Shown: positions 4,732-53,171 of the stretch, one piece after another | Layout of the letters: the number at the start of each line of letters is the position of its first letter | Numbering within the stretch: the stretch's first letter is position 1 | Origin: Pecten maximus | Taxonomy: Eukaryota | DNA: 64,000 nucleotides | Direction of reading: 5' to 3' | NCBI RefSeq assembly: GCF_902652985.1 | Contig: NC_047028.1 | Location: 10,664,001 to 10,728,000 of the forward strand | The notes under the pieces: model-generated | What the model was told of the DNA's origin: nothing | Databases searched by the model: none | What the model saw: the letters and a program-made list of their open reading frames with translations, nothing else | Translations under genes and position numbers: made by a program

Positions 4732-5234
4732 CTGTAGGTATAGAAACACATAATAAATACGATATACCCAATTAAACACACCCGTAATTTTGTTTTCAAT
4801 TTCAACTGACGAAAAACTAATAATACAAATCATTCTGTACGGAAATCAAATACTTGTCACAACAAGATGAATTTTAATTAATGTTCATTTTATTCTAATT
4901 ATCTATTTTTATTATGATTTCTTTTCATGTATTTTTATTTTTATTTAATCTGATTTTTTAATATCTAGTTATATTAATTTATTCATTATCATTATTGATG
5001 TTTTTATTGTTTTATTTATTTTTGTTTTGTTTTTTGTATTTGGTAAAGTGAATAACAGTTTATACTGATAGTTCGTAATTGTATCAATATGCTATAACGA
5101 TAAAAATAAAATAACCGAAGAACACAACATATCTTATGTAAAGGTAAATCTGCTATAACTTAACCTTTCAGTCAGTCATCATTCTTGACTTATTCTCCAC
5201 TGTATGTCACTGGATGATCCCTGAAACAACTCCT

Positions 5235-21400: not shown

Positions 21401-23875
21401 GGGTGTGTACCGCTCCGGTCTGAAAACACAATATAACAATATTGTATCTTTGATGTTACTTTAAAAAGTCTTAAATGTAATATCTTAACAGTTTATTACA
21501 ATTTTAAATAAAAGTCAGTCTTAATTGACCAATTAAAACATGTCAACAAAGTTTTACTCAATTGAAATTGTTTAAAAAATTATTTTCAATAAATATTATT
21601 ATTTTATCAGAGTTAAACCCATACAATAACTTATCTAAAGACTTGTTAATACAATACTATATTGAAGTTTTTAAAAGGAGGTGGTGATTTTTTAGATATA
21701 GGGATTGAACAGTGTTTTTATTGTGTTTAAAGTGGTATGAATGCAATGGGATAGGACATATTCTATAAAGTGTGTTTTTTCATGTGGTTACTGCAATCTG
21801 TAAGATATACTGTATCTGATTTCTTGCTACATAAACCAATGAGAAAGATTTGTTTACCTTCAAACTGTCTAGGATGTATCTGCCTCCATGACCAGTGGGA
21901 CCAAACACATTAAGTACAGTACGGTCCGTGACTTCACCAGGCTGTCTTAGAGATTCAATGTTCTTTGGAAGCTTGCCCCTCCTTAGGAACATGGGGACAG
22001 CGTCCCGTCCAGAGTTTGGAGGAATAACCTCGCGGATCTCAATAGTGTCATCAGCAAGGAAGTAGTGGAGGACCAGCTCCCTGGGGTCACCAAACATGTT
22101 GTCCGTGTCATCCCAGTAGCAGAAGAAACGGAGAACATGACGATCGTGATCAAGGAACTGTTTGAGTGTGTCGTGTTTCTCATAAGGTCTCAGTGGCTGC
22201 ATACTTTCATCCATCTGATATAAAACAACAGTTAAAGCAATTGACTTATAGCACTGCCATTTAGTTAAACACAACGACAAAAAATATTGAAAAAGAATAT
22301 ACACTGTATTCAATAAATTATGTAGATATAGGTTTATTGAAAAAAGAAAATATTTGAAGTAGGAAACCGAAACAATGTTACGTCTGATTTTTTTTACAAT
22401 TAATCCCAAAATTAAAACCAGAAAAAAGATTGCAACATATACATGTACACCAGTACTTACAGCTTTTCTGTATTTGGTGTATGGATCGTTGGGTGATGAA
22501 TCAGGTCGTTGTACACGGACACCAAGTTTTCTCAGGAAATTTTGAGTAAAATCATCACAGTTTGTTAGTTTGAAAACTTTGGAATACAGACTGATTTCCT
22601 TTCCTAGGTTGAAATCTTCTACTGTGTAGCATTCATCATCATTGGGTGCTGGTTTGGGAATTCTGTGTCGTCTTATTAATGTTCCTGTTTAAAAGAATTT
22701 CTAGTTTGTAATATAACACAAAAATTTTGAATTCCATACCGATGGCAAAAACTTTATATTACACATAGTTCTGAGTATAGATCAATTTAACATTATACTC
22801 CTGCTAATATACATTACCTACATGTTAGTCCTACGGTATTAAAGTACACATTGTATATAATTTTATCATAAAAGTGGAAATGAATGATATTAGAAATAAT
22901 CATGATGAAAATAAAAATATATTATTAATTAAAGATTTTCCTCAAATTTTAAGTTTATTTACTAACAGAGTCAGTTATTATGTGTACTTTCCAGATTAAA
23001 TTATTTTTGTAAATGCTGAAGGCAATAACATTTTATATTTACCTTGTGGAACACCACTGTTCTTTGCTCTTGGTTCAATCACCTGGATGGAATCATCTTC
23101 AAGGTAGAAATAAACTTTGCAATTCCTCACTCTGTATTGTTCTTCTCTCTTCTCGTGCACTGCCTCTTGGAAGTAAGCATCAAAGCAAAGGACCTGTCTG
23201 TCAAAGGCGACCCATGCTGGTACATTGCTGCCCTCTCCACTTGGGTACATTGTGTTCCTGGGTTTCAGTTTCTGTCCCCTTAATGGCTCTCCTCCTATAC
23301 CTGGCTTATCTTCGCCAACCAGCATGGACACTTCATTTTTGTATCCAAAATGGTGGGATTTGTGATGTTTAGTTTTTCCAAGCTATAAAATTTAAATTGG
23401 ATTAACGAATTAGTATTGTTTGTACATGATGTTTACAGGTTAGTGTACATTGTATACCATTAAATAATTTCTGTTTCTTGTAAGGTCTACATAATAATAA
23501 GTTCATAACCCACCCCTTTTCCTCCTATTTTTAAAACTTTTCTGACACCAAGGGCATTCTATACAAGACAATATTTTTCAATATTCAGCGTTGTTGGTGT
23601 ACGTGAACGTGCAAGAGAGACGTCTTAATGAGTTCATAAACGGATGTGTTTTATGAAAATAAGAACATGGATTGTAGAAACGACTTGTATGTTGTGATCG
23701 GTCTAAAAAATATTCATGTCTAACTCGTACTGAACGGGCAGTGTTGTGCCTTGCATTTCAATATCTTTTATATTTAGTTTTTAAAATAAACTCAAGCATT
23801 ATGAAAAATGAAAATGAACGTGCAATTACTTACACTGTTATTAAATGAGTTCCCTGGTAGGAATGGCAACGCCAT
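18444..23875 (-). CDS. EFHC2: EF-hand domain-containing family member C2 (three DM10 domains plus EF-hand region; ciliary microtubule inner protein), 10 coding exons
   Basis: Exons 23875-23834, 23382-23043, 22684-22461, 22214-21858, 21419-21281, 20734-20426, 20264-20068, 19842-19511, 19168-19076 and 18651-18444 splice in phase. MALPFLPGNSFN start, EDKPGIGGEPL, PAWVAFDRQVLCFDAYF, PLRPYEKHDTLKQFL, FPPYNGWGSEEDSL and C-terminal NWRDAPVP all match the EFHC2 (not EFHC1) pattern. Confidence 0.96.
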
Positions 23876-27827: not shown

Positions 27828-28779
27828 TATACGTGACTGATTATTGAACGCTCTATTTTCTGATATACATTGGATATTACCGTGCACGAGATCGTACAAA
27901 ATACCTTAGAATGTAATAAGTTGATATAACTATATGAATATGACAAATCAGAAAGCACTTGCGACATGTTTTTATTTCAATAATTATTAAGTTATTTTAC
28001 TAACACTAACAATGGAAATACAATTTTCGATTTATTACTGAGCGACAAGTTAAGCACAACAAAATAAAATACTGTAATCATAAAAAAACTAGATAGTAAA
28101 TCTTACTCAAAATTGATCACATAAAAGGTAACATACAACCAAGTATAGTTGAATAGATTTGCATGACAAATTACAATGACTATATGACCAGAATCCGGTT
28201 CTATCAACTTTCCTTCACCTAAGGAACTCTCTTATCAAAAAACAAACAAAAAAAGAAAAGATAGAAAACAAATCCATAGGAAAGAATTTAGTTGGGGGAA
28301 AAGTCTTCTAGTTCAGGAATTTTCGTTTAATAATACAAGGCTTTCATATGGATAATTTAACATTACAGAAAGTCTTTAAGATAAGGTGAAGCTTTAAGAT
28401 GAAGCTGGGACTAAATGTTCCGCAAGCGTAAGCGTTTTATACTTCAATAATGACAACCGAAACGCAAATCCACAAATGACGTGATATAGGTAATAAAAGG
28501 TTTGTAGTACAGATCAATAGTTTGTTGTTATTAGATAAACTTTAACATTGTATGTAACACGTTGATGCAGTTTGTTGCAATGATTATTTAACAGAGTAAT
28601 CGTTTTTTTTATAACCTTATCTTAACTGATCCTTCGTTAGCAAACCTTTTTGAAGCACCCTCCTGAACAGTCACTCACGTTGTCAGAACCACGAAGATTT
28701 CTAGCTATATTCCTTTATAAATTTAATCCAATTAAGGAATTTCTTTTTCTTCAGTTAGACCTCCAAATAAGTTTAATTA

Positions 28780-29007
28780 CTGTAAACGTGGTTATTTTCG
28801 CGGTGGGTTAATTTCGCAATTTCAAAATGTAAACTATACGCGTGGGGTACTTTTCGTGATCGATCAACCTTCGTTTGTAGTTCGAGACTTCGTAAATAGA
28901 TATTACATGTAAAATGTAAACTATACGCATGGGGGAAATTTTCGCGAACAAAAGGACTCCGCTTAATTAGCGTATATTCCCCCTCGCGTAAATTTCCACG
29001 TTTACAG
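28780..29007. mobile_element. MITE with TA target duplication, downstream of TIR-BIR copy 1
   Basis: TA-CTGTAAACGTGG ... CCACGTTTACAG-TA. Confidence 0.85.
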
Positions 29008-29140
29008 TAAATAAAAATGAGGTGATTAATAAACTTTGCAAATGAAAAACATATTTTAAGGTATCACGCTTTTGTTGAAACCAAACAGATATGAACAATA
29101 ATGAGAATGAGATATCCTAATTTCACAATTCTGAGAATAA

Positions 29141-30802
29141 TTACGACTTGGATTGTGAAGGAGGAAATAAAAACACATTTTCATGTTTGATTAAACGATT
29201 ATCCAGTTTTTTTATCATAAACGACACTACCGTTCTCGGAGAGGCATGAGCTGCAGTCTGCAGAATACTATCGATATAGTCCATGCCTTTGACAGACGTC
29301 ACGTGTGCACAAGATGGTGAGAGCCAAGCATGCGTTGCCATCACATTTTGACCATGCTTTATAGAGGTCAGTACCAAACCACACGAATAACACGTAAAGG
29401 CATCACCACACCCCGTATAGTTAAACCCAGCCTCTGCTATTTCATTGATCAGCTTCTGTCTATCAAACGACTGTGCGCTGCCTTCTGGCATTTTTTCAAG
29501 GGAAAATGATTCAAATGATTTTACTCTAGCTTCAAAAGTCCTATACGTCTCATTAACAAGATTTTTGCCCTTTCGAAATGACGTTTTTGCATTTTTGATA
29601 AAATCGTCTGTCTGATTCTGCCTGACAAAAGGACACAGCTGATTGAGTGCAGCATGCGTGACCCAGGGGTTGTCATCCTGTCGCCAGCTGATCACGAATC
29701 TTCCACATGCGAAACAAGTAGTAAACAGAGGTGCCCCACTGAAGAAAAATCCTGCTTTGGCAAGTGATTCTGTCTTTGGAACCAGATCATTTTCATGGAA
29801 TACCGGAAATGAATCATATCGCGTTTTTTCGTCGGCATAATCAGGGAATTTGATGGCATGGTTCGGTGACTTCTCGGTAGTGATCTGGTACCTTGTTTTA
29901 ATCCATAACTGTCTGATGTAATCCTGATCAGAAAGGCGACCGTTTAACGTGCACCCGAGAATAAAAACTACTCCTGCCCGTCGGAGAGTAGAAACGTCCA
30001 TTATATTTCCACAAAGAGAAGCGAAAGCACTATCGAATTCCGTAAGGTCAATATTAGTTTTGATTGTATCTTTGTCGTAAATTAGACTAACCGTTGTATT
30101 GGGTGTACATAACATAGAACATTCGCCGCACACTTTAGTAATACCCAAAGAACTATGTTTCTGACTGTGCTTTAGAAATTCGTCCATATCTATACGAAGG
30201 ACTTCGCTATTAATCTCCACGATGACACCATAAACGTTGAACAACATCAAAGGAAGATCCAAGCCATGCTGATGTAGGCTTTGTGTTACATTCGTAGCCC
30301 CAAGAAAATGACTAAAGGATGGCTGCTTGTAACGTAAATGCCGTATCAAGTGTACCTGCCATCCATCATGTTCGGAATCTACTATCTTTGTAGATGCAAG
30401 ACAGGCCAGGTCATCTTCAAGGAAAAGAGAACTGTTTAAACGCAAACAAACAACGTTGCTTTTCGATACCCGACGTAAAGCTAATGATGGAAAGTATGAG
30501 AGGATGGAGTGATTTCTAAATGGAATAGACAGCATGAACAGAATTTTATCAGTATGATCTAAAAGATATTCAAAGTTATGGAATATTCTCTGTTCTACAA
30601 AGTTGTCTTCAAGTGTGAAACATTCTATGCCGTCGTCTGTTAAGAGGGGCATCAACTCCTTTTTGACAAACTCCAAGTCATGGTCATGATAAACGACGAA
30701 TACCTTAGGCCCCCGAACGTCAGCTGGAAGAACTAAGGCGGTGCTATCCTCAGGAGAAAAACTTTCCCTGTTTACAGGTAAAGACGAAATATATGACCCC
30801 AT
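29141..30802 (-). CDS. TIR-like domain plus two BIR domains (IAP-family fusion protein), copy 1, 553 aa, single coding exon
   Basis: aa 33-158 TIR-like (VFVVYHDHDLEFVKKELMPLL..GIECF..DNF...IFHNFEYLLDHTDKILFMLS). BIR1 has C363-C366-H383-C390 and BIR2 has C471-C474-H491-C498, both with Cx2Cx16Hx6C spacing and RxxSF and AxAGF motifs. MGSYIS start preceded by an in-frame stop; splice acceptor at 30846-30847. Confidence 0.9.
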   Translation of the reverse strand: MGSYISSLPVNRESFSPEDSTALVLPADVRGPKVFVVYHDHDLEFVKKELMPLLTDDGIECFTLEDNFVEQRIFHNFEYLLDHTDKILFMLSIPFRNHSILSYFPSLALRRVSKSNVVCLRLNSSLFLEDDLACLASTKIVDSEHDGWQVHLIRHLRYKQPSFSHFLGATNVTQSLHQHGLDLPLMLFNVYGVIVEINSEVLRIDMDEFLKHSQKHSSLGITKVCGECSMLCTPNTTVSLIYDKDTIKTNIDLTEFDSAFASLCGNIMDVSTLRRAGVVFILGCTLNGRLSDQDYIRQLWIKTRYQITTEKSPNHAIKFPDYADEKTRYDSFPVFHENDLVPKTESLAKAGFFFSGAPLFTTCFACGRFVISWRQDDNPWVTHAALNQLCPFVRQNQTDDFIKNAKTSFRKGKNLVNETYRTFEARVKSFESFSLEKMPEGSAQSFDRQKLINEIAEAGFNYTGCGDAFTCYSCGLVLTSIKHGQNVMATHAWLSPSCAHVTSVKGMDYIDSILQTAAHASPRTVVSFMIKKLDNRLIKHENVFLFPPSQSKS

Positions 30803-32098
30803 AGCAGCACTGGTACTGTATGCTGGTCACTAGTCCAGGTTTTCTCTGTAAAAATATAGTATAACAATGTTTTAAACGTTTTAAACAGTGATTGGTACAA
30901 TATTTGGTAGTGTTTGAAACAGTGATTGGTACAATATTTGGTAGTGTTTGATACAGTATTTGGTACAATGTATAGTACAGTGTTTTGTAAATTGCTTGGA
31001 TCATTACATAGTGCACTGTTTGCTATCATACGTGTACAATCACTTATCAAACATTTAAAGCGTTTACATCTGCAAAATTGGCAACAAGAAATCGACTGTT
31101 ATTATAGAATACTTAAATTAATTATTTATGTATTTGTGGTTCAGTTGGTCTTGATTTAAGTAAGATTGTAATACCTAATAATTTGAAAAGTATCTGTCAT
31201 CAATATCTGTTAGACACATAAATTTCAAACAAGCAAAAATGTTTTCGGTTTTTGTTTTTTGTTTTTTGGTTTTCTTTCTCGTTTTTGTTGTTGTTGTCTT
31301 TTAATTCCACTTTATATTCTACGTAGCTTACATCAGCCAAATGAAAGGGAGATGCATAATATATGATGACCTTAGTCCATATGCTATCTGAAGAGTATTA
31401 ACGCCATTCATTATTATTGTAAAAAAAGAAGCTGCAGTGTCGTACAACCTCTGTTTTGAAATGCTAAATTTTAATGTATTAATCATATAAATGTATTCAA
31501 CGATACCCGGAAATTTTAATATTGTTAAAAGACGTTTATATACCAATCACATGTCATAATATGGTATCGAATGGTGCTCTTACCATTGTAAAGTCTAATA
31601 ATTGATTTTGATAATCGTGTTAGCGCAAACCCAAATGCAAACTCTTGTAGAATGTCAAGCTGGGCGTCTCTTGGTAGTTTTGACAGGCGCTTGCGATTTT
31701 TATGATTCTGCTTGTTTTTTTTCATACTGCTCGCCCTACTAAAACTAATGTATACCAATTTTATAGTGTCCCTGAAACTCTTGTGATATGGAGTATAATG
31801 ACGATATCAGAGAGAATTTCGGAATTTGATTACAGGAATATAAATTATTAAATTTGAAATTAGTTTTTGTGACTAGGCAAACTATATAGATGCACGAAAA
31901 TATCAAACACATTTTGATGAAAATTATTTAATGCATGCATTGAAATCAGATTTTTGAAAACAATACATTTAACAAATTTTTTAGAAGCAAGAATCAGTAA
32001 AGCATAGACGCCTTAATACTAAAATTTCAGTCTCTTAATAACTAGTTTTGTTACATCACTGACCTTATCGGTTAACTCAACCACGTTTTGTGTAAACA

Positions 32099-32121
32099 GG
32101 AAATTCCCACTCCTTTAAATA
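32099..32121 (-). promoter_or_regulatory. Putative promoter of TIR-BIR copy 1: TATA-like box and NF-kB site
   Basis: Minus strand reads CCGGAAG...TATTTAAA GGAGT GGGAATTTCC, then a candidate splice donor AAG|GTCAGT at 32064/32063. Confidence 0.5.
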
Positions 32122-33884
32122 GAAAACATAATCACGCTTCCGGTTCGGTTGACTAAACCGGCTATTGTTAAGCTTGAATTGTTCGTCGTGTATGTAGTGT
32201 ATTGATCGTCTTGGCGTATGTGTTACTACTGTAACCCTGACTGAGCGACTCGTCATGTATTTGTGTACTGTATAATTTATTATTACTTGCACAATACACA
32301 TAGTTTACCATTGACAATGCTATTAAAACCAAATTTTAGACAACTAGTTTATACCTATATCAATAGTTACCAGATAAATCAAATTTTAGACAACTAGTTT
32401 ATACCTACGTCCATAGTTACCAGATACACGAAATCCAGCTTCTGTCACGTTTGTAAACTACCGACATGGCTCCCCGGTTATTATGTCTATACCATGCCTG
32501 CTTTACGTTCAAAATAGACAGATATCTTAATATTGTACCGTAGCTAACATAGTCTTAAAGCTTGACAACATATACTTACTTTTTTGTAGCGATGTTCCAA
32601 TCCCGATTATAATGGTATGTGTTCATCCCCTCGATTATTTGGATGCCATACACCATCATGATTAAAATAATGTTAGATATTTCACAGAAGTAGAAATGTA
32701 AGGATTAAACACGGTCGATATATATTTCCTCCTTTCTCGATACAGACGTGTCACAGTCTATAGAACACAAAGGGCCTTCACGTTATGTTGACAGTAATAA
32801 TTGGCAGATAAAAATGTCGATAATGCTGAATGTTAAACCAGGTGTAACAGTGTATGACACATACAGTTTGTAAACGGCGTTGCCAGTTATATATGTATAC
32901 CCACTATACCACTCCATATACATATAGCCAGTCTCGCCTGTCCTATGGATTGCATGCATCTAAATATAAATCGTCTGTTGTTGCAGCTGTGAACTCCCCA
33001 GCTTAGATCTATGTCAATCTTATATCTTTTTAAAGAAGTACATTTTATTGTGACTATATTTTCAAAAAGAAGAATGGCCGTGAAAAATATTTTGTTTGGA
33101 ATATATACAGTGGCTATTAAAAAAAATTATGCTGAGATAATTTCATTTTTGAAACACTTCCTATTTGTAAGGAAATCCTCTGGGTACTACAGAAGGCGCG
33201 GTAAAATAAGGAACGCATGTTTTCAACACTTAATTTATTATATTTCTGTTGTATTTAGTATTAAATGATAAAAGGAAGTCAAACCATTGCATGTTTCATA
33301 TAGATGTAACATTGAAGTTTGTTTATAAGGATGATAATAATAATAATAATGTTTAGGTCAAACAAAACAGATTATGATGTTTTCCCGTCTCATATCAATT
33401 TGAAAAAAAAACAAACGCACTCTCATTAAGTACACATTTTATCTAATAGATTTGGACAAAATTAATCGTGTGCCTTATATGATAACTATCAACGACACAA
33501 TTGTATCACTCTACATCCAATAGCTGTCGCATTAGTATCTGCCTTGATAAATAGGACAGAAACAATATTTATCATTGGTATGTCTATATAGTATATTGTA
33601 GAGTAGCCTATTCTTGTATTCAATCAATAATGATTACTCTTTTTGTCGGAGGTGTAAATATTTAACTATGGTTAGTCAGAAGAGTGTATACATTCTAAAA
33701 CAATGTTATTAATGTATTTCTGTTTATAAAATTACAATATCACGTGAGCAAATACCACATGGACTGCTAGGTTTGCTACTGCAGTTCCATTTCTTCAGAA
33801 ATGTTCACTGCCTTGTTGATACTTGAATCATGAAATATATGATCATATCAAATACCCCAAATATGGATGGAATCGTCAGTGTTT

Positions 33885-35104
33885 TCAATAATTGAAGTCA
33901 ATATTATAAGTCGATGAAGTTAATGTTGATGACATTCCGATTTCAGGACTCAGGTACGTAGATGCCGTATCTGGGGATTCAGCACTACACGACGACGTCA
34001 CTTCCTTTGGACAGTGATTTCCTCCTATAGGTACAGTCAGTTTCAGAATATGTTTGAATGCCGCTTTGGATCGTTGAAAGTTTGTCACAGGAGGTACGTC
34101 TCTTCCTGTTTCTGTTGTGTTCGGCGACAGGTTACTAAAGATTTCACCAGTCATGTCCTGTGGTATAATGATGCTTAGATTACTGCTAATAGTTTGCAAG
34201 TGTCGATAAGGAAAACTATATGTGAGTTTACCGGGTATGTGGTACCCAGGCAGGTAGCCATCGTGGTTAAAGGAAGGCCTGTTTGTGTAAGAATTTGTCC
34301 CCGTGACACTATCGATACTGTCCCTCCGTCGAATACACGGAGGCAATCTTTTCTGCAATTCAGAATAAAAGTTATCCCCCCTCATATCAATATGTTTTAA
34401 TCGTTTAAAAAGTTTACTTTCTGTAAACGAACACGATGTATTTTGATGTGAAGTTGTGTCCAGAATGGTTATCCTGAAATATTTTTTGTGCTGCACCATG
34501 CTGTTAAATATATTTTCGTGAACTTTTTCTTCTGTTGAATAGTTCGGAATAAAAAACACAACATCACTTTTCTTTATGGTATTGATTTCTGCTGTAGAAG
34601 CACCTGAAAAAGAAGCAAAGAATATGCCGTAAGTCACCATGACCCGTTTGAAGTGGTTATGCCAATTACGAAAAGTTAATGCCATCTACATGGTATTTAC
34701 CTTTGACTTATGTTTAAGAAACGGCAGTGTTGTCGGATGAAGCATTCATGCAACATTAAACATATATTTATGAATATTATGAAGGTGAAATTTCATTTCC
34801 TATTGGTCTTTATATCAACAAGTTTCTTTCTTGTCACGAGGAAGCCTTTTCCTTCATATCTGACTTTGAGGACACCTTGTCTTCACAGAGTTTCAACTGA
34901 TTGATAAAGCATTTTACCTCCACCCGTTAAATCAGCAGAACAGACAACTTTAAGTGACGGTTGTGCGTAGGTCATCAGTATGTCGTACAATTTCTTAGCT
35001 GGGGAGACATCTTCATCACAGTGGCAGATGTACACTTGCTTGTCACTTCCAATGGACTTGCTATTGCCTAATGATACCAAATTTTCCACGAATGTTAAAT
35101 TCAT
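33885..35104 (-). pseudogene. Partial duplicate of the Ig-TIR receptor: only the two cytoplasmic (TIR plus tail) exons, frame intact; pseudogene or cytosolic TIR isoform
   Basis: Exons 35067-34918 and 34603-33885 are near-identical to 46089-45940 and 45625-44952. Homology stops at 35794, just before the TM exon. An in-frame ATG at 35104 would give 301 aa. Confidence 0.75.
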
Positions 35105-36019
35105 CGCTTTATAATGCAGTAATCTTTAAATTGTACAATGAGTTGCTGTTGGTTTTCAAATCTAGATGTTAAATTCAATATGAATAAATCCAAAGATTAT
35201 TTATGAAGAAATAAAAATATATCAGAAATATGAATATATCTTTTTACAAAACTTCAAGGTCAGAAACATCCTGAATAAAATAAGCATTGAAATCATGTGT
35301 AACTAAATGAAAAAAAATACCATAACAATACATTCACTAAATTCGAAGGTTTGACATAATTACAATTTCAAAATGCAAAGTAAAATAAGGCCAGATATTC
35401 ATTTTGCACAACTCAAATTAAGATATTGAGTGTTTTATAAAACTTAAAGCTACGAAACCATTAACACTGTAATGTGTTTGTTCCGCTTGCCCATTTTGTC
35501 CCCTTATCTGAATTTCCAGTCTTTGGCCCCTGGAGTAATTGACGTGTTAACAAAAATAAAATACCCGTGTGATGTACAGGAATTTGAAGTATATTTTGGT
35601 AAATATATGGCATGTATCTATTGCTAATTTCAAATTTAAATATTTGCGCTATCTTAGCAAGGAACTGCCTAGAGTTGGAATTATGAGAAAGATGAATGTC
35701 AACAAAGGTAGTTTTAATGATTGCTTGTTTTTGTTTGATGCGTTATCTTAACCCCATTTTATTATTTATTTATTTTTCTGAATTGCAATACTCTAGATTA
35801 TATACTCCAATATTGTTTGCAACACATTTATGAAGTTTGTCGCCAAGATTATGCATATATATTTACCAGAGTAATTGATCTTTCTTTGGTAAGCCTTTTT
35901 GAAGCACCCTGAAAGGTCACTCACGTTGTCAGAGCCACGAAGATTTCTAGCTAAATTACTAAACCAAATTCAATTAAAGATTTTCTTTCTTCAGTTAGAC
36001 CTCCAAAGAAGTTGAATTA

Positions 36020-36243
36020 CTGTAAACGTGGTTATTTTCGCGGTGGGTTAATTTCACGATTTCAAAATGTAAACTATACGCATGGGGGTAATTTTCGCGA
36101 TCGATCCACCTTCGTTTGTAGTAACACTAAACAATCGAACTTGAACTTGTAAATTATACGCGCGGAGGAAATTTTCGCGAACAAAAGGAGACTCCGCTTA
36201 ATAAGCGTAAATTCCCCTCTTGCGTAAATTTCCACGTTTGCAG
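36020..36243. mobile_element. MITE with TA target duplication, downstream of TIR-BIR copy 2
   Basis: TA-CTGTAAACGTGG ... CCACGTTTGCAG-TA; same insertion site as 28780-29007. Confidence 0.85.
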
Positions 36244-36372
36244 TAAACAAAATGAGATGCTCAATAAATTTTACAAATGAAAGAATTATTAAGTACCACG
36301 CATTTGTTGAAACCAAACCGATATGAATAATAATGAGAATGAAGTATCCTTGTTTTACAATTATGAGAATAA

Positions 36373-38034
36373 CTACGACTTGGATTGTGAAGGAGGAAAT
36401 AGAAACACATTTTTATGTTTGATTGAACGATTATCCAGCTTTTTTATCATAAACGACACTACCGTTCTCTGAGATGCATGGGCTGCAGTTTGCAGAATAC
36501 TATCGATATAGTCCATGCCTTTGACAGACGTCACGTGTGCACAAGATGGTGAGAGCCACGCATGCGTTGCCATCACATTTTGACCATGCTTTATAGAGGT
36601 CAGTCCTAAACCACACGAATAACACGTAAAGGCATCACCACACCCCGTATAGCTAAATCCAGCCTCTGCTATTTCATTGATTAGCTTCTGTCGATCAAAC
36701 GAATGTGCGCTGCCTTTTGGCATTTTATCAAGGGAAAATGATTCAAATGATTTTACTCTAGCTTCAAAGGTCCTATACGTCTCATTAACAAGATGTTTGC
36801 CCTTTTGAAATGACGTTTTCGCATTCTTGATAAAATCGTCTGTCTGATTCTGCCTGACAAAAGGACACAGCTGATTGAGTGCAGCATGCGTGACCAAGGG
36901 GTTGTCATCCTGTCGCCAGCTGATCACGAATCTTCCACATGCGAAACAAGTAGTAAACAGAGGTGCCCCACTGAAGAAAAATCCTGCTTTGGCAAGTGAT
37001 TCTGTCTTTGGAACCAGATCGTTTTCATGGAATACTGGAAATGAATCATAACGCGTTTTTTCGTCGGCATAATCAGGGAATTTGATGGCATGGTTCGGTG
37101 ACTTCTCGGTAGAGATCTGGTACATTGTTTTAATCCATAACTGTCTGATGTAATCCTGATCATTAAGGCGACCGTTTAACGTGCACCCGAGAATAAACAC
37201 TACTCCTGCCCGCCGGAGAGAAGAAACGTCCATTATATTTCCACAAAGAGAAGCGAAAGCACTATCAAATTCAGTAAGGTCCATATTGGTTTTGATTGTA
37301 TCTTTGTCGTAAATTAGACTAACCGTTGTATTGGATGTACATAACATGGAACATTCGCCGCACACTTTAGTAATACCCAAAGAACTATGTTTCTGACTGT
37401 GCTTTAGAAATTCGTCCATATCTATACGAAGGACCTCGCTAATAATCTCCACAACGACACCATAAACGTTGAACAACATAAAAGGAAGATCCAAGCCATG
37501 CTGATGTAGGCTTTGTGTTACATTCGTAGCCCCAAGCAAATGACTGAAGGATGGCTGCTTGTAACGTAAATGCCGTATCAAGTGTACCTGCCATCCATCA
37601 TGTTCGGAATCTACTATCTTTGTAGATGCAAGACAGGCCAGGTCATCTTCAAGGAAAACAGAACTATTTAAACGCAAACAAACAACGTTGCTTTTCGATA
37701 CCCGACGTAAAGCTAATGATGGAAAGTATGAGAGGATGGAGTGATTTCTAAATGGAATAGACAGCATGAACAGAATTTTATCAGTATGATCTAAAAGATA
37801 TTCAAAGTTATGGAATATTCTCTGTTCTACAAAGTTGTCTTCCAGTGTGAAACATTCTATGCCGTCGTCTGTTAAGAGGGGCCTCAACTCCTTTTTGACA
37901 AACTCCAAGTCATGGTCATGATAAACGACGAATACCTTAGGCCCCCGAACGTCAGCTGGAAGAACTAAGGCGGTGCTATCCTCAGGAGAAAAACTTTCCC
38001 TGTTTACAGGTAAAGACGAAATATATGACCCCAT
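36373..38034 (-). CDS. TIR-like domain plus two BIR domains (IAP-family fusion protein), copy 2, 553 aa
   Basis: Same length and motifs as copy 1; about 23 substitutions by manual count (~96% identity); all eight Zn ligands retained. Confidence 0.9.
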   Translation of the reverse strand: MGSYISSLPVNRESFSPEDSTALVLPADVRGPKVFVVYHDHDLEFVKKELRPLLTDDGIECFTLEDNFVEQRIFHNFEYLLDHTDKILFMLSIPFRNHSILSYFPSLALRRVSKSNVVCLRLNSSVFLEDDLACLASTKIVDSEHDGWQVHLIRHLRYKQPSFSHLLGATNVTQSLHQHGLDLPFMLFNVYGVVVEIISEVLRIDMDEFLKHSQKHSSLGITKVCGECSMLCTSNTTVSLIYDKDTIKTNMDLTEFDSAFASLCGNIMDVSSLRRAGVVFILGCTLNGRLNDQDYIRQLWIKTMYQISTEKSPNHAIKFPDYADEKTRYDSFPVFHENDLVPKTESLAKAGFFFSGAPLFTTCFACGRFVISWRQDDNPLVTHAALNQLCPFVRQNQTDDFIKNAKTSFQKGKHLVNETYRTFEARVKSFESFSLDKMPKGSAHSFDRQKLINEIAEAGFSYTGCGDAFTCYSCGLGLTSIKHGQNVMATHAWLSPSCAHVTSVKGMDYIDSILQTAAHASQRTVVSFMIKKLDNRSIKHKNVFLFPPSQSKS

Positions 38035-39300
38035 AACAGCACTGGTACTGTATGCTGGTCACTAGTCCAGGTTTTCTCTGTAAAAATATAGTATAACAAT
38101 GTTTTAAACGTTTTAAACAGTGATTGGTACAATATTTGGTAGTGTTTGATATAGTGTTTGGTACAATATTTGGTAGTGTTTGATACAGTATTTGGTACAA
38201 TGTATAGTACAGTGTTTTGTAAATTGCTTGGATCATTATATAGTGCACTGTTTGCTATCATACGTGTACAATCACTTATCAAACATTTAAAGCGTTTACA
38301 TCTGCAAAATTGGCAACAAGAAATCGACTGTTATTATAGAATACTTAAATTAATTATTTATGTATTTGTGGTTCAGTTGGTCTTGATTTGCGTAAGATTG
38401 TAATACCTAATAATTTGAAAAGTATCTGTCTTCAATATCTGTTAGACACATACATTTCAAACAAGCAAAACATGTTTTCGGTTTTTGTTTTTTGGTTTTT
38501 TTCCCCCCCGTTTGTTGTTGTTGTCGTCTTTTAATTCCACTTTATATTCTACGTAGCTAACATCAGCCAAATTAAAGGGAGATGCATATGATGACCTTAA
38601 TCCATATGCTATCTGAAGAGTATTAACGCCATTCATTATTATTGTAAAAAAGAAGCTGCAGTGTCGTACAATCTCTGTTTTGAAATGCTAAATTTTATTG
38701 TATTAATCATAAAAATGTATTCAACGATACCCGGAAATTTTAATATTGTTAAAAGACGTTTATATACCAATCACAGGTCATTATTTTGTATCGAATGTTG
38801 ATCTTACCCTTGTAAAGTCTAATAATTGATTTTGATAATCGTGTTAGCGCAAACCCAAATGCAAGTTCTTGTAGAATGTCAAGCTGGGCGTCTCTTGGTA
38901 GTTTTGGTTGTTTTCATACTGCTCGCCCTACTTAAACTAATATATATCAATTTTATATATATCAATGTCCCTGAAACTCTTGTGATATGGTGTATAATGA
39001 CGATATCAGAGAGATATTTTTCGGAATTTGATTACAGGAATATAAATTATTACATTTGAAATTAGTTTTTGTGACTGGGCAAACTATATAGATGCACGGA
39101 AATATCAAACACATTTTGATGAAAATTATGTAATGCATGCATTGAAATCAGATTTTTGAAAACAATACATTTAACAAATTTTTTAGAAGCAAGAATCAGT
39201 AAAGCATAAACGCCTTAATACTAAAATTTCAGTCTCTTAATAACTAGTTTTGTTACATCACTGACCTTATTGGTTAACTCAACCACGTTTTGTGTAAACA

Positions 39301-39323
39301 GGAAATTCCCACTCCTTTAAATA
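39301..39323 (-). promoter_or_regulatory. Putative promoter of TIR-BIR copy 2: TATA-like box and NF-kB site
   Basis: Same TATTTAAAGGAGTGGGAATTTCC block as copy 1. Confidence 0.5.
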
Positions 39324-41312
39324 GAAAACATAATCACGCTTCCGGTTCGGTTGACTAAACCGGCTATTGTTAAGCTTGAATTGTTCGTCGTGTATGTAGT
39401 GTATTGATCGTCTTGGCGTATGTGTTACTACTGTAACCCTGACTGAGCGACTCGTCATGTATTTGTGTACTGTATAATTTATTATTACTTGCACAATACA
39501 CATAGTTTACCATTGACAATGCTATTAAAACCAAATTTTAGACAACTAGTTTATACCTATATCAATACAATGTAGTTACCAGATAAATCAAATTTTAGAC
39601 AACTAGTTTATACCTACGTCCATAGTTACCAGAAACACGAAATCCAGCTTCTGTCACGTTTGTAAACTACCGACATAGCTCCCCGGTTATTATGTCTATA
39701 CCATGCCTGCTTTACATTCAAAATAAACCTGACAGATATCTTAATATTGTACCGTAGCTAACATAGTCTTAAAGCTTGACAACATATACTTACTTTTTTG
39801 TAGCGATGTTCCAATCCCGATTATAATGGTATGTGTTCATCCCCTCGATTATTTGGATGCCATACACCATCATGATTAAAATAATGTTAGATATTTCACA
39901 GAAGTAGAAATGTAAGGATTAAACACGGATATTCCCTCCTTTCTCGATACAGACGTGTCACAGTCTATAGAACACAAAGGGCCTTCACGTTATGTTAATA
40001 ATTGGCAGATAAAAATGTCGATAATGCTGAATGTTAAACCAGGTGTAACAGTGTATGACACATACAGTTTGTAAACGGTGTTGCCAGTTATATATGTATA
40101 CCCACTATACCACTCCATATAGCCAGTCTCGCCTGTCCTATGGATTGCATGCATCTAAATATCTTGTGATCAAAAAATTTAAGATTATAATAGAAACGAA
40201 ATGTGAATTTTAAAATAATTTGGTTTTAATTACTTATGCTTTAGGTTAGCGAATCGTAGCAATTATTTACGATGAAACTTTGATGTTGCACTAAATACTG
40301 ATCACAATATTTTTATTTAGACATTTTTTATTTCTTTCACTTCAGCTCATTTTATGTGGTAATTTAGATTTCCCAATAAATTCGCGGGAAATGAATTTGA
40401 TGACGTAACCGGAAGCCCACATGCTATTAGAACTTGACCCGGAAAACATGCATGACGATAATAAAAACAGAAGATCATTGAACGTTATACCGGATTATTT
40501 TCGCATTTTTTGAGACACCAATGTACTAAAATACAACGGAAGGTAACACTGATTTTGTTCATTGCTATCGTATAAAGTAAAACGAACAGTTATTGCGAAA
40601 ATAGCATTTGCGTCACCTACTACTGTAGTTGGGCTAGACCTACTTTCGTTTTACAGCTTACAGATATGGTCGTATAAATAATTCATCTTCTCAACCATAG
40701 TCGATCTAATTGCTTATCAGCGGGATTGTTCTATTAAGAATATTTGTACTTCTCATGTACAGTGCATCTTTGTTTAAAATTGACTGGTCTGCGGGTCTGA
40801 TATGACTACCCTCATAATCAGCCGACCACAGGGTCACGTTACTATCGTATCCCTTAGTAAACACTTCATAATAAATGACTATGTCTGTATCTACGGCAGA
40901 TTCGTCTGTATTACTAAAATTTTCTACCTACTTGCAGAGACGTGTATATGGGACGTTGTGTCTCCATTGACTAAATACTTCTGTTTACACACAGGGACTT
41001 GATAATTAGTTACAGTCTACATGTATTTGGACCCCCCCACCCCCCCCCCCTCCCCCCTCCTAGTGTATAGCACATTTTGAGACGTTTTGGGGGGCTTGAT
41101 TAGAATTTGGCAAAAATGACATCCCGGGTGGTCAGAATTCGAAGGGGGGAGCCCTATGACTCGAGCTCATACAATTCATTGTAACCTGTCTTTGTACTCT
41201 ATGACTCATAACCTGTCACAGGTTTACTGGATATGAGTTACAGGGTAAACAGACATACATGTACATGTATCAAGTGTGTCACAGGTTATAACAGAAGAAA
41301 GAGAAAACTAAG

Positions 41313-41582: not shown

Positions 41583-44500
41583 CTGGTGCACTAATACATG
41601 TTTGATGAGTCTGCGGTATGTTCGTGTTTGTCTCCTTTGGTATACACTTGTATATTACCGGTAATGTGGAAAACTTTTAAATTTTTTAAGATTGTTCCAG
41701 CACTGGCAACCTGTCTTTCCCTTGGTTGTCATTTAGCTTAAGAAGATATTTATCAATTTAATCTCTTTCATTTGATCATATAAAAACAGTGAATATTTCC
41801 CCAAATATTAAGTGTAATTGCTTTACACATACCCGTACCTTGTATTACTGACCACGATTGATGTTTAAACGGGAATGGACTACACATTCTTATCAAATAT
41901 CTGCATTACCTAAAACACTGAATTTTTTGGGAAAAAAAGCATGCAAGATTATTTTTGAGTCAGTCAGGTTAGTAGAGAAAGTTTTACTGTATTTGACATA
42001 TTAGCCGAAGTCATGAAAATGTGAAATTAAAAAAAAAATTGGTTATTGAAGATCAGAGAAATGTCAACAACAAATTTAAAAAGAATGGAATTGGGTTTTT
42101 CTCGGTCAGTTCTGATGGCCTGTGTAAACACGTTATGAAGATATAAAGTTCATTTTACACAATTGCCTGCTTCGATTGTCTATCTTTTAAAATTAAGTTC
42201 ATCTGTGTATATTTTTATTTTTTGAGGGGTTTTGTTTTATAAATCCTTGCAACAACTTTTTAAGTCATGTAGAATATGATTCTTGACAACTTGACTACAG
42301 TAAGAATTTAGCATTCAAAATCCATTGCGCTCCACACCATATTGTTTGTTGACAGTGACATTTTCACAGTTATTACATTACTTAATTAGAATACTGTGTT
42401 ATATATTTCTTGAATCCACTCGAATATAGAAATATTTCCTTCATTTTCCAAATCTGTAATTGAAATAATTGTAGAATATACATGTATGTGTTTGCAGTAA
42501 TAAGAAAATATTTTTTATTAATATTAACATATTTGGTGCATCAATCCAAAAATACTTGTTGACATATACTGCATTACTTTTGGTCGGATTTCAATACACA
42601 GAATGTAAGATTTTATTAATCAATAGATCTGGCAACCTCACCTTCTAACAGGTCAAAGACCTTTGATATGAGACTAATTAATGAGTATTCAGAGTTTCCT
42701 CTTGCCCCACCACCGGAAGTTAGACACTGACAAGCTCTCATACAGTTGTTGACTTGAGTTTAGGAACACATTCTCAAATGACAGATGATCATATGCTAAA
42801 TTAAGGGTTGGATTTTCACTAACTTGAAGAGTTGTGCCCCTTTGTTTTCTTTCCTATACATCTTATTCTAGCAGATTGACATTCATATTTGTTTCCAATT
42901 GTTCTACACCTCATTATATACATCTGATGACATTTGAAAGTGGGTGAAAAATGGAATAGGTTATTGTATTGAGTCACATTGACTTCATTTCTCCCAATTC
43001 ATCCAGTTCAAGAAATCTGGAAAATCCATTTTAGTTTCCATGTAGGTAAGATTTTAACATTTTATTGTTATGGTTGTTTTGCTTTCTATTGTTGGGGCAG
43101 AGGGCATATTCATATAAATCAGATATATAACTCCTATATAACATGGTTTACACTTGGTTATTTGTATACTTAAAATTTGTTTCCTTTCTTTTGTTAATAT
43201 CTCTGTGGTTATAACTTCTAGTCTCTCACATGAGTCTTTACACTTCCTTCTAGTAAATATCTTCAAAAGTTTCTTCTTATTTCTTTCTGTTTCCAGTTTC
43301 CTTTTGGTTAAAAAATTGTCATATTTAGTGGATTTTGAGAATTGGTTGATTTTCAAAATTTGCATTTGTTTTGCAATACATATACATCAATATTTTGCAT
43401 GCCTCTGTAACATATATATATAGAAATGTGCTGCTTCTTCCTTTTTAACAATAATTTCAATAAAATCTTTAGTTTGGTTAACACTTCCTATAATGTTGTT
43501 GAACATTTTGAATTGGTGGATCTGTCAGATCAGCACATATTCAGCACAGTAGTCCAAGATAACATTCCGGTTTAATTGTTTTTCTTCTGTATGGCTAACT
43601 TTATGATCTTTTCAAACTTGGTCTTGGGCATTATTTGGCTGGTCTGATTGTTGTTTAAGAATCTTGAGGCACTATGCTGGCTCCCAAGGAGGAGGGGTGG
43701 GACACAAAAGGACAATTCAACAATTTAATAGCACATGCATTCTGTAGTGATGGTCCCAAATCTTGAATGCTACCAGGTTTGTTTTTTTAAAAGGAAGGAC
43801 CTTTACCTTCATTAAAGACCACTGGCGCCAGGCGTGCAAAAAAACTTGAAAATCTTCAACTGAATAACCTTGAGGCCAAGATACCTTGTATTGGGCCTGT
43901 AGTATGCTGATGAAGTGATACAAAATTCAAGGTCACAGCCATCAAAAATGTTTAAATGTTTAAACCCTTTTTTTCTCAGTATCAAAAAAAGGTCCAGAGA
44001 AGAAGGTGATTCATACAGGCCCATATGGCCTCTTATTTGGTTGCTGCACAATTCCTTAAGTACTCTTTCATACTCGGATGTCAAAGGTCAATGTCACTAT
44101 TTCTGTCAAATGAAAACCAGTTGCTTGGAATACGACATGTAGCTTAAGATTTGAAAGACAAATGTTAAAGATAATGTAACTATAGATAGAAAAATACTGC
44201 AGATATCAATGAAAGACCATACTTTCCCTACATGAAAAAAGTATTAGAACCCAATGCTACTGGCATGGTCACACAATACTTCTTTTATATATTCTTTACA
44301 TGGATGGATAACGGCAGCATTTTAAATACTTTAATATATAAATACTTATTATCGGTTAGCTTGTAATAATAATAATGTTTAGGTCAAACAAAACAAATTA
44401 TGATGTTTTCCCGTCTCGTATCAATTTGAAAAAAACAAACGCACTCTCATTAAGTACACATTTTATCTAATAGATTTGGACAAAATTAATCGTGTGCCTT

Positions 44501-44951
44501 ATATGATAACTATCAAAGACAAAATTGTATCACTCTACATCCAATAGCTGTCGCATTAGTATCTGCCTTGATAAATAGGCCAGAAACAATATTTATCATT
44601 GGTATGTCTATATAGTATATTGTAGAGTAGCCTATTCCTGTATTAAATCAATAATGATTACTCTTTTTGTCGGATGTGTAAATATTGAACTATGGTTAGT
44701 CAGAAGAGTGTATACATTCCAAAACAATAATATTAATGTATTTCTGTTTATAAAATTACAATATCACTTGAGCAAATACCACATGGACTGCTAGGTTTGA
44801 TACTGCAGTTTCATTTCTTCAAATGTTCACTGCCTTGTTGATACTTGAATCATGAAATATATGATCATATCAAATACCCCAAATATGGATGGAATCGTCA
44901 GTGTTTTCAATAATAGAAGTCAATATTATAAGTCGATGAAGTTAATGTTGA

Positions 44952-50900: not shown

Positions 50901-51019
50901 TAATCCCTCTCTGGAATGGTTACACAACTGTCTTCCCGGGCACACAATGGTTGAGTAAGGGGTATAGTACAACATAGTGTTATCCCCCTCAACAACACGA
51001 GGATTTCCTGGGGTTTCAT
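44952..51019 (-). CDS. IL-1-receptor-like type I membrane protein: signal peptide, 2 Ig-like domains, TM, TIR, Ser/Thr-rich tail; 7 coding exons, 580 aa
   Basis: Phase-compatible GT-AG exons: 51019-50881 (MKPQEILVLLRGITLCCTIPLTQPLCAREDSC...); 50120-49860 (Ig: IYIPCC..KWYF..MGLYRC..TVHLTAI); 49091-48884 and 48398-48262 (second Ig-like); 47003-46830 (TM: VLLPLSVVTILGFLLVTALI-RSK); 46089-45940 (KQVYICHCDEDVSPAKKLYDIL..LKVVCSADLTGG); 45625-44952 (..IKKSDVVFFIPNYS..LKHIDMRRDNFFSELQKRL plus tail). Total 1743 nt. Probable 5'UTR exon 52300-52191 and a first exon ending at 52714. Confidence 0.85.
48520..48690 (+). mobile_element. V-domain-type SINE fragment in a receptor intron
   Basis: GGGTTTTCTCCGGGAACTCTGGTTTCCTCCCACAGTAAGACCCCACGC. 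Confidence 0.65.
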
Positions 51020-51877: not shown

Positions 51878-53171
51878 CTATAAACTGTGTATACTTCGGA
51901 GTAGTGCGACATTAATCATGGCAGACCTACGTATATGTGGTCGCATTCACTAGAGAATTGATTACAATTTTTTTTGACAACTTGGCTTGAAATGAAAGCT
52001 AATTTAAAAGATAAAGGGAAATTAATACATCAAAATATTGGAATTTTAGCCGTATACATCGAAAATTGATAAAAATGTAGATAAGTGAAATATATATATA
52101 CAAAAAAATAAATAAATAAAATTAAAAAAAAAAGTAAAATTAAATTGAAAAAAAAATTAAATCATTGATTTTTATCCTGAAATACCTCACCAATATTTGA
52201 TACACATTTCACATGATAAAGAGTCTATGTCAAGATGTCAATGTCAAACAGAATTCACGAGATTTATACGGTATTGACAAAAATGATATTCAGTGGAAGG
52301 CTGTAAGGAAAGCATTTCACAAAAGATTACATTAACACTGAGGATTGTGAATGTAAACCTTATAAGAAAAAGCAAATAAAAGTATAAAAACGTCTCAAAG
52401 TCATAATACATTCAACAGTAGGCAGGACTTTAATGAGTGTATGTTGAGAGGGCCATTCATGTCACACATTTCTAGACCACATACGCCCAAATTTTGAATT
52501 GGTATAGTGTGATTCCTTATAAAATGAGATTGGTTATAATATACCTACCTAGATCAGATTGAGGAGTGGTGTATGTGACGTAAGCTTTTAAGTTCGCTAA
52601 TTGGATTTCAGCTGACAATCATATACAATGTACATGTACCATAATTATACGTTTATAAACGTTGTGTCATCAATATAATAACTGTACGTCACTACATGTC
52701 GATATATTCTTACCTGTTTTGTTTTCATTGTAGTTGGTAATCGCCATTTTCTGTTATAGGTTGTTTACTTCCTGGTAATTGAATCCAGATGAGGTTATCT
52801 CCCTTGTACCAAGAGTGGCGTTGTATTCTCCAATCTGAGTGACATAATACAGCCGAGACGTCCCTCACTTATACGGGACTGATGGAGACCAAAAGATAGA
52901 TAACTCGTCTATACTACATGTATGCTAGATATGAATGCAATATCATTTCTTACTAGGGTAAACTATTGCAGAAACGGGAATAAATTTTCTTGCACTTTAG
53001 CTAGAATCAGTTAATATTACGTTATTTATAGGAACATTAGATATGTCATAATTTGGCTTCAAAATAAAAGAATAGAAGATAATAGTATTGCTTCAAAAAG
53101 CTATAAATCATCAAAGCGTATTATTAATAATATTATTATTATAATTAAATTCATCATTGAATAATTATAAA

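What the first reader, a model, noticed from the sequence alone, without database searches (positions are those of the whole stretch)
29141..30802. Unusual domain architecture: TIR fused to two BIR domains, with no RING, CARD or UBA
Seen: a TIR-like beta/alpha motif order at aa 33-158 and two complete CCHC BIRs in one intronless 553-aa ORF, present in two intact copies. Known: IAP families are expanded in bivalves, but canonical architectures pair BIR with RING, UBA, CARD, NACHT or UBC. Inference: a lineage-specific shuffle that makes a scaffold rather than an E3 ligase. The single coding exon suggests a retroposed or intron-loss origin.
Basis: partly seen in the sequence, partly recalled or inferred. 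Interest (0 to 1): 0.85.

Follow-up and report, generated by a model that had tools for sequence, protein, structure and literature searches.

The report
Scallop TIR–BIR–BIR adaptor gene pair
Two neighbouring scallop genes each encode a protein that joins a Toll-receptor-type signalling (TIR) domain to two apoptosis-inhibitor (BIR) domains; it belongs to an old, uncharacterised family found across bivalves that may link pathogen sensing directly to cell-death control.

Summary

- **Not a scallop-specific shuffle.** The same architecture occurs in at least 22 clusters (50% identity), with named members from Mytilus, Pinctada, Mercenaria, Sinanodonta and Ylistrum. This genome has four paralogs. 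Some members are already auto-named "TIR domain-containing protein".
- **Not retroposition for this pair.** The two copies arose by DNA-level segmental duplication. All four paralogs carry a splice acceptor just upstream of the ATG.
- **A scaffold role is plausible.** No member has the TIR catalytic Glu, and there is no E3 module.
- **Both copies look functional.** dN/dS between them is 0.24.

The scan also noted this cluster under other headings on the same window.

The parts
29141..30802 (-). Copy 1 coding exon: 553 aa plus stop. Domain order is TIR, middle domain, BIR1, BIR2, tail.
   Evidence: ORF. An identical 553-aa protein exists in public sets. Domain evidence.
30782..30802 (-). N-terminal MGSYISS, which fits the N-myristoylation consensus M-G-x-x-x-S.
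   Evidence: Read from the sequence. In-frame stops (tag, tga) lie between the upstream acceptor and the ATG, so Met1-Gly2 is the first possible start in this exon. MGSYMS is conserved in Ylistrum and absent in the other paralogs. The modification itself was not tested.
30329..30706 (-). TIR domain, aa 33-158. It is most similar to receptor-type TLR1/2/6/10/15 TIR domains. It lacks the catalytic Glu and the BB-loop Pro-Gly.
29858..30322 (-). Family-specific middle domain, about aa 161-315. It is alpha/beta, has an invariant H216, and carries an H212/H216...C225-x2-C228 motif that most but not all members share.
   Evidence: Conservation. AF2 pLDDT about 60-85. No Pfam hit, no PDB sequence hit and no Atlas hit. 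Not a TIR duplicate. Found only in the four paralogs of this genome. The fold was not searched on its own.
29615..29830 (-). BIR1, aa 325-396. Zinc ligands are C363, C366, H383 and C390. It keeps W373 and D377 and has Leu where NAIP and XIAP have the groove Trp.
   Evidence: Pfam. Alignment to NAIP5 BIR2/3 and DIAP1 BIR2. Positions.
29288..29536 (-). BIR2, aa 423-505. Zinc ligands are C471, C474, H491 and C498. It lacks the Trp and the Asp-Pro-Trp of peptide-binding BIR domains, so it is atypical and type-I-like.
   Evidence: Pfam. Alignments. Positions.
29144..29287 (-). C-terminal tail, aa 506-553. It has a conserved strand (T..V.F....K.D, aa 523-532), a terminal F.P motif and no Cys.
   Evidence: Family alignment. 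AF2 strand E523-532.
30846..30858 (-). Candidate 3' splice acceptor (tatatttttacag) 43 nt upstream of the ATG. It implies a non-coding 5' exon further upstream.
   Evidence: Sequence. The same element is present in copy 2, and analogous ones lie at -59 and -57 in paralogs L003 and L004. There is no RNA evidence.
36373..38034 (-). Copy 2 coding exon: 553 aa, 96% identical to copy 1. It carries 13 derived substitutions, including W380L in BIR1.
28623..32967 (.). Duplicated block A, copy 1 (gene plus flanks). It matches 35872-40162 at 94-95% identity.
   Evidence: blastn self-comparison.
35872..40162 (.). Duplicated block A, copy 2.

Best explanation
The window carries a tandem pair of expressed-type genes, each with one coding exon and probably one upstream non-coding exon. 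They belong to an old, bivalve-wide protein family with the order TIR, family-specific middle domain, BIR1, BIR2, short conserved tail.

The protein is most likely a non-enzymatic cytosolic adaptor or scaffold. Its receptor-type TIR domain would join TIR assemblies of Toll/IL-1-type receptors or MyD88-like adaptors. Its two BIR domains would recruit or sequester BIR-binding partners, such as caspases, IBM-bearing proteins, or TRAF/TAB-type proteins. It has no ubiquitin-ligase activity of its own.

In the Pecten/Ylistrum clade an N-terminal Met-Gly...Ser motif suggests myristoyl anchoring to membranes, as in TRAM.

Shown here: the ORFs, the domain identities, the family distribution, purifying selection, the mode of duplication, and the absence of the catalytic Glu and of a RING. 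Inferred: the binding partners, membrane anchoring, expression, and the 5'-UTR intron.
For: - Intact ORFs in two copies, with dN/dS 0.24 between them.
- Two canonical BIR domains.
- No other Pfam domain.
- The same architecture is conserved along the full length in 25 aligned sequences from several bivalve orders.
- This genome has four single-ORF paralogs.
- The position aligned to the TLR 'YEL' Glu is hydrophobic in every member.
- The MGSYISS start is preceded by in-frame stops.
- The gene and its flanks were duplicated together.
- All four paralogs have acceptor sites upstream of the ATG.
- Mercenaria isoforms X1 and X2 differ only in their first 2-6 residues, which fits a short alternative 5' exon ahead of the large exon.
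Against:
- No interaction was tested.
- The window clade has lost the BB-loop Pro-Gly that the rest of the family keeps. In TLRs this loop matters for adaptor coupling (from general knowledge), so its TIR contacts may be atypical.
- BIR1 has Leu where peptide-binding BIR domains have Trp, and BIR2 lacks most groove residues. Caspase or IBM binding is therefore uncertain.
- Copy 2 carries W380L in a conserved BIR core position and 13 derived changes against 3 in copy 1, which may indicate relaxed constraint.
- The function and fold class of the middle domain are unknown.
Confidence: 0.6

Rival explanations
1. The protein is a dominant-negative or decoy regulator. It occupies TIR assemblies or soaks up IAP antagonists or caspases, and so dampens signalling rather than relaying it. 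This would resemble TIR-only MyD88-like proteins and RING-less IAPs.
For: There is no effector module such as a death domain, RING or kinase. The BB-loop Pro-Gly is lost in this clade. RING-less BIR proteins and TIR-only MyD88-like genes have been proposed as competitors in oysters (PMC4346834; PMC8917759).
Against: A conserved 150-aa middle domain and a C-terminal tail are kept under purifying selection across bivalves. That is more than a simple decoy would need. This rival cannot be separated from the scaffold model by sequence alone.
Confidence: 0.22
2. The protein is a sensor or guard. The BIR domains, the middle domain, or both act as baits for pathogen-encoded or stress-released BIR ligands. 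Ligand binding releases the TIR domain to oligomerise and signal, in the manner of an integrated-decoy receptor.
For: The full-length model is compact (pTM 0.68). The strand at 280-288 is predicted only when the C-terminal part is present, which hints at a closed intramolecular arrangement. The family has expanded and diverged quickly, and the two duplicates evolve asymmetrically, as immune sensors often do.
Against: There is no direct evidence. Between the copies dN/dS is below 1 in every domain. No ligand is known.
Confidence: 0.1
3. The protein is an enzymatic TIR effector that consumes NAD+ or makes a signalling nucleotide, like SARM1 or the bacterial and plant TIR proteins, with the BIR domains acting as regulators.
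Against: The residue aligned to the catalytic-type Glu is F in the window protein and hydrophobic in all 23 members that cover the region. No Glu is conserved anywhere in the family's TIR region except at the end of the last helix. The best sequence matches are receptor-type TLR TIR domains.
Confidence: 0.03
4. The copies are silent retrocopies or young pseudogenes that happen to keep long ORFs.
For: The coding sequence sits in a single exon. Many intronless bivalve IAP genes are untranscribed retrocopies (PMC7831173). Expression could not be checked.
Against: dN/dS is 0.24 between the copies. The ortholog in Ylistrum is 73% identical along its full length. Four intact paralogs and a family-wide conserved architecture exist. 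The flanks were duplicated with the gene and no poly(A) tract is present. Upstream acceptor sites are conserved.
Confidence: 0.05

Closest known systems
TRAM (TICAM2), the vertebrate myristoylated TIR sorting adaptor
   Same: It is a small cytosolic protein with an N-terminal Met-Gly myristoylation motif followed by a TIR domain that bridges a TLR to downstream factors. The TRAM TIR is among the fold matches.
   Different: TRAM has no BIR domains and no middle domain. There is no specific sequence relationship, since the best matches here are TLR1/2/6/10/15 TIR domains. Myristoylation here is only a sequence motif.
MyD88 and bivalve MyD88-like adaptors
   Different: The recruitment module here is two BIR domains plus an unknown domain, not a death domain. 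The domain order is reversed, with the TIR at the N-terminus.
IAP family proteins (XIAP, cIAP1/2, DIAP1, NAIP) and the RING-less BIR-only IAPs described in oysters and clams
   Same: The BIR domains are canonical Cx2Cx16Hx6C. The closest solved relatives are NAIP BIR2/3, DIAP1 BIR2 and cIAP BIR1. Tandem duplication and single-exon coding sequences are typical of bivalve IAP expansions (PMC7831173, PMC8917759).
   Different: There is no RING, UBA, CARD, NACHT or UBC. An N-terminal TIR and a family-specific middle domain are present. Neither bivalve IAP survey lists a TIR-containing IAP architecture. The groove residues are only partly kept.
Bivalve cytosolic TIR-domain-containing (TIR-DC) families, such as the ecTIR-DC families and oyster TIR-STING
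   Same: These are bivalve-enriched intracellular proteins that fuse a TIR domain to another signalling module. They have been proposed as alternative adaptors (PMC10279657; PMC6321704).
   Different: I found no open paper naming a TIR+BIR family. The key catalogue (Gerdol et al. 2017, Dev Comp Immunol 70:145) is not held, so it may already list this family.

Membership tests
TIR domain superfamily (Pfam PF01582 / PF13676) | Sequence match to a TIR profile above the curated threshold | tested here: inconclusive
   The window protein scores TIR_2 at 14 bits, E 0.07, below the cut-off of 28. Other evidence is positive: 8 of 25 family members hit TIR_2 (best E 4.5e-6) and 7 hit TIR (best E 1.3e-7); the family profile hits the solved TLR15/TLR2 TIR at E 2e-13; the four-paralog profile hits TLR15/6/1/10 at E 5.5e-7 to 1.6e-4.
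TIR domain superfamily | Flavodoxin-like fold of five parallel strands and five helices that superposes on solved TIR domains | tested here: met
Signalling-competent receptor/adaptor TIR domains | BB-loop Pro-Gly (box 2) | tested here: not met
   The family consensus keeps P-G. The two window copies and Ylistrum have 'FV-EQR' / 'IE-EQN' with a one-residue deletion and no Pro-Gly.
Enzymatic (NADase) TIR domains: SARM1, plant TIR, bacterial TIR | Catalytic Glu in helix alpha-C, aligned to the E of TLR 'WCxYEL' | tested here: not met
   The HMMER alignment to TLR15 puts the consensus Leu opposite that Glu. The column reads F, L, M, A, Y or V in all members.
BIR / IAP family (Pfam PF00653) | BIR profile match above threshold and Cx2Cx16Hx6C zinc ligands | tested here: met
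   93 bits against a cut-off of 22.9, in two stretches. Ligands are C363/C366/H383/C390 and C471/C474/H491/C498. PDB matches to NAIP, DIAP1, cIAP and XIAP BIR domains reach E 1e-20. Foldseek target TM is 0.8-0.9.
E3-ligase IAPs (XIAP, cIAP1/2, DIAP1, ML-IAP) | C-terminal RING (with or without UBA and CARD) | tested here: not met
   No RING, UBA or CARD hit at E up to 1 and none in any family member. The tail is 48 aa without Cys. The C-terminus is conserved in Ylistrum and other members.
Type II (IBM/caspase-binding) BIR domains | Peptide groove residues: Trp after the CxxC, an acidic residue, and Trp/His before the last Cys | tested here: inconclusive
   BIR1 keeps W373 and D377 but has L386 opposite the NAIP 'akW' Trp. 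BIR2 has I481, Q485 and NVM in place of W, E/D and DPW. Mapping to XIAP numbering is from memory.
N-myristoylated adaptors (TRAM-like) | Met-Gly-x-x-x-Ser/Thr at the true N-terminus, with the modification shown | tested here: inconclusive
   The motif is present in both copies and in Ylistrum. In-frame stops upstream fix Met1 within this exon. The lipid modification cannot be tested with these tools.
Processed retrogene | Poly(A) remnant or target-site duplication, no shared flanks with the parent, no introns | tested here: not met
   The 3' flank has no A-tract. The flanks were duplicated with the gene at 94-95% identity. A candidate acceptor lies upstream of the ATG in all four paralogs. The parent gene is unknown, so an ancient event cannot be tested.

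The most novel reading that the evidence does not exclude
The TIR-middle-BIR-BIR family is a bivalve-specific signalling route. A membrane-anchored TIR adaptor or sensor would couple Toll/IL-1-type receptor activation, or the detection of BIR ligands, directly to caspase control. It would do so through a previously undescribed middle domain and would bypass the death-domain (MyD88/IRAK) relay.
Probability: 0.2. Interest if true: 0.7.

Novelty: new variant of a known kind. Interest (0 to 1): 0.5.

Why it matters
Bivalves have very large TLR, TIR-adaptor and IAP repertoires, and how these are wired together is largely unknown. A conserved protein that physically joins a receptor-type TIR domain to BIR domains is a concrete, testable candidate for a direct link between pathogen sensing and apoptosis control. 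It does not rely on a death domain or a RING. It also defines an uncharacterised domain of about 150 aa that occurs only in this family.

The finding is not a scallop oddity, and it is not invisible to databases. Homologues are deposited for several bivalves, and some are auto-labelled as TIR proteins. The value therefore lies in recognising and delimiting the family rather than in a categorically new system.

Tried and rejected
- Pfam on the single protein gave only a sub-threshold TIR_2 hit. Profiles and folds were needed.
- Foldseek on the full-length model returned only BIR hits, so the N-terminal 296 aa were modelled separately.
- The middle domain gave nothing in any search: no PDB sequence hit with one sequence or a four-sequence profile; no Pfam family in any of 25 members; no ESM Atlas feature hit, and only TM below 0.4 to unrelated bacterial and phage clusters from a poor Atlas model. 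hhalign against the TIR profile gave probability 0.1%, so it is not a second TIR. I do not claim a new fold.
- The search for homologous proteins, with the protein and then with the family alignment, found only the self cluster, the Ylistrum ortholog and BIR-only IAPs. The family came from the exhaustive representative search.
- A search of this genome with the TIR profile found no closer donor TIR than the four paralogs, so no donor gene could be named.
There is therefore no RNA evidence and no exon structure from other species.
- Complex prediction was not used. No specific partner pair was well enough founded.
- Rfam found nothing in the window.
- Literature: there is no TIR+BIR architecture in the oyster or hard-clam IAP surveys. 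Phrase searches gave no hits. Gerdol et al. 2017 is not held.

Full report
**What is there.** Window 29141..30802 on the minus strand is a 553-aa ATG-initiated ORF. A second ORF of identical length lies at 36373..38034 (-). The two are 530/553 identical with no gaps. The window is G000:C14:10664001-10728000 of a 918,306,378-base assembly in 3,983 contigs. The nearest named ortholog is an uncharacterised protein of the scallop Ylistrum balloti, 73% identical over its full length. From memory these assembly figures match the Pecten maximus reference; I did not verify this. The exact 553-aa protein is already present in public protein sets.

**BIR domains.** Pfam BIR scores 93 bits (cut-off 22.9) in two stretches. 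Both repeats have the canonical Cx2Cx16Hx6C ligands: C363/C366/H383/C390 and C471/C474/H491/C498.
- The closest solved relatives are NAIP BIR2/3, DIAP1 BIR2 and cIAP BIR1.
- The full-length AF2 model superposes on XIAP, cIAP and DIAP1 BIR domains at target TM 0.8-0.9.
- BIR1 keeps the Trp and the acidic residue after the CxxC (W373, D377) but has Leu where NAIP has the 'akW' Trp.
- BIR2 has lost most of those positions.

Peptide-groove competence is therefore uncertain for BIR1 and unlikely for BIR2. No RING, UBA, CARD, NACHT or UBC is detectable. The tail after BIR2 is 48 aa without cysteines.

**TIR domain.** It holds.
- A profile of 25 family members hits the solved TLR15/TLR2 TIR at E 2e-13.
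- A profile of the four paralogs of this genome alone hits TLR15, TLR6, TLR1 and TLR10 TIR domains at E 5.5e-7 to 1.6e-4.
- 8 and 7 of the 25 members hit Pfam TIR_2 and TIR respectively.
- AF2 predicts five beta-alpha units over residues 33-157 at pLDDT about 90.
- Foldseek's best matches to the N-terminal model are all TIR domains: TLR1/10/15/6, MyD88, TRAM and Hydra TRR-2.

Two functional details stand out. First, the residue aligned to the Glu of the TLR 'WCxYEL' motif is Phe in the window protein and hydrophobic in every member. From general knowledge this is the catalytic Glu position of SARM1, plant and bacterial TIR domains, so an NADase role is very unlikely. Second, the BB-loop Pro-Gly that most of the family keeps is lost in the Pecten/Ylistrum clade.

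Between the TIR and BIR1 lies a conserved alpha/beta region of about 150 aa (about aa 161-315). It has an invariant His (H216) and an H-x3-H...C-x2-C motif that most but not all members share. A conserved strand sits in the C-terminal tail at aa 523-532.

The middle region matched nothing:
- no Pfam family in any member;
- no PDB sequence match;
- no usable Atlas neighbour;
- no relation to the TIR profile, so it is not a degenerate second TIR.

In this genome it occurs only in the four paralogs. The strand at 280-288 is predicted in the full-length model but not in the truncated one. This hints that the C-terminal tail packs onto the middle domain, which is an inference only.

**Family and history.** An exhaustive search with residues 1-320 found 22 representative clusters at 50% identity. 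Most are 510-570 aa long and align over TIR, middle domain, both BIR domains and tail.

Named members come from:
- Mercenaria mercenaria (two loci);
- Sinanodonta woodiana;
- Pinctada imbricata;
- Mytilus edulis (three).

Some are labelled 'TIR domain-containing protein' or 'BIRC7_8' by UniRef. The rest are unnamed Logan, JGI or ENA contigs.

This genome has two further single-ORF paralogs at C14:37.46 and 37.47 Mb, about 33% identical. A maximum-likelihood tree groups the window pair with Ylistrum (100/100 support). Next come an unnamed sequence and the second Pecten pair. The Mytilus, Pinctada, Mercenaria and Sinanodonta lineages are separated by branches of about 1 substitution per site. 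The architecture is therefore old and bivalve-wide, not a scallop-specific shuffle. I saw no named non-bivalve member.

**The duplication.** Self-comparison shows two duplicated blocks. Block A, containing the gene, is 28623-32967 against 35872-40162 at 94-95% identity. Block B is 33338-35800 against 44364-46798 at 96.5%. The order is A-B-A-(4.2 kb)-B, which is a DNA-level segmental duplication carrying about 2.2 kb of 5' flank and about 0.5 kb of 3' flank.
- Nei-Gojobori dN/dS between the copies is 0.24 (dS 0.079) and is below 0.35 in every domain.
- Using Ylistrum as outgroup, copy 2 carries 13 derived residues against 3 in copy 1. These include W380L at a conserved BIR1 core position.

**Intronless?** The coding sequence is one exon in all four paralogs. 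However, each has a polypyrimidine tract plus CAG 43-59 nt upstream of the ATG. These elements persist although the two pairs share no upstream sequence similarity.

In copy 1 in-frame stops lie between that acceptor and the ATG, which fixes Met1 within this exon. Mercenaria isoforms X1 and X2 differ only in their first 2-6 residues, as expected for alternative short 5' exons. No poly(A) remnant follows the stop. ATTAAA signals lie 366 and 416 nt downstream.

Retroposition is therefore not supported for these copies. An ancient event at the root of the family cannot be tested here.

**Mechanism.** The best-supported reading is a non-enzymatic adaptor or scaffold. A receptor-type TIR domain would join Toll/IL-1R/MyD88-type assemblies, and the BIR domains would hold BIR-binding partners, with no ligase activity of the protein's own. 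The MGSYISS start fits the N-myristoylation consensus and is shared with Ylistrum but not with the other paralogs, which suggests TRAM-like membrane anchoring in this clade.

The rivals are:
- a decoy or negative regulator, which sequence cannot distinguish from the scaffold model;
- a BIR-baited sensor;
- an NADase effector, disfavoured by the missing Glu;
- silent retrocopies, disfavoured by selection and conservation.

**Literature and limits.** The hard-clam and oyster IAP surveys describe tandem duplication, retroposition and new architectures, but they list no TIR-containing IAP. Phrase searches for TIR-BIR found nothing relevant. The main bivalve TIR-DC catalogue (Gerdol et al. 2017) is not held and may list this family.

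Earlier first-stage notes on this same window flag the myristoylation motif and a possible IL-1R-like neighbour. I checked only parts of those notes.

**Verdict.** It is a new variant of known kinds (TIR adaptors and BIR proteins). It is visible in databases but, as far as I could check, undescribed and functionally untested.

Noticed in passing
window 33885-34685 (-) and 44952-45707 (-): Two ORFs of 266 and 251 aa are 94% identical. They lie in duplicated block B (33338-35800 against 44364-46798, 96.5% identity) and have no Pfam hit at E up to 0.01. The first-stage notes treat 44952-51019 as an IL-1R-like gene. If that is right, a partial copy of its 3' part lies between the two TIR-BIR genes.
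   Followed up: partly
L003:1453-3177 (+) and L004:1423-3069 (+) = G000:C14 about 37.47 and 37.46 Mb: This is a second tandem pair of TIR-middle-BIR-BIR paralogs of 574 and 548 aa, about 33% identical to the window pair, with dN/dS 0.52 between them. The L003 protein ends in a hydrophobic stretch (IPFSCFFIFFALLLLLSSFFCKI) that looks like a tail anchor. That would be a different route to membrane attachment from the N-terminal Met-Gly motif of the window pair.
   Followed up: partly
L003 and L004, 57-59 nt upstream of the ATG: Directly after the candidate acceptor (cag) both leaders contain an upstream ATG. In L003 it opens a short uORF that ends before the main start.
   Followed up: no
window 5231-6640: A minisatellite of 88 copies of a 16-bp unit (TCCACTACCAAATTGA) with 86% matches. 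It coincides with a strong negative GC skew.
   Followed up: partly
window 21780-22409 (-): A 209-aa ORF with a DM10 domain (E 1.4e-27). It is probably an exon of an EFHC- or NME-type ciliary gene unrelated to the finding.
   Followed up: no
window 53169-54939 and 57278-59066: A further direct duplication of 1.8 kb at 95.5% identity. Its content was not examined.
   Followed up: no
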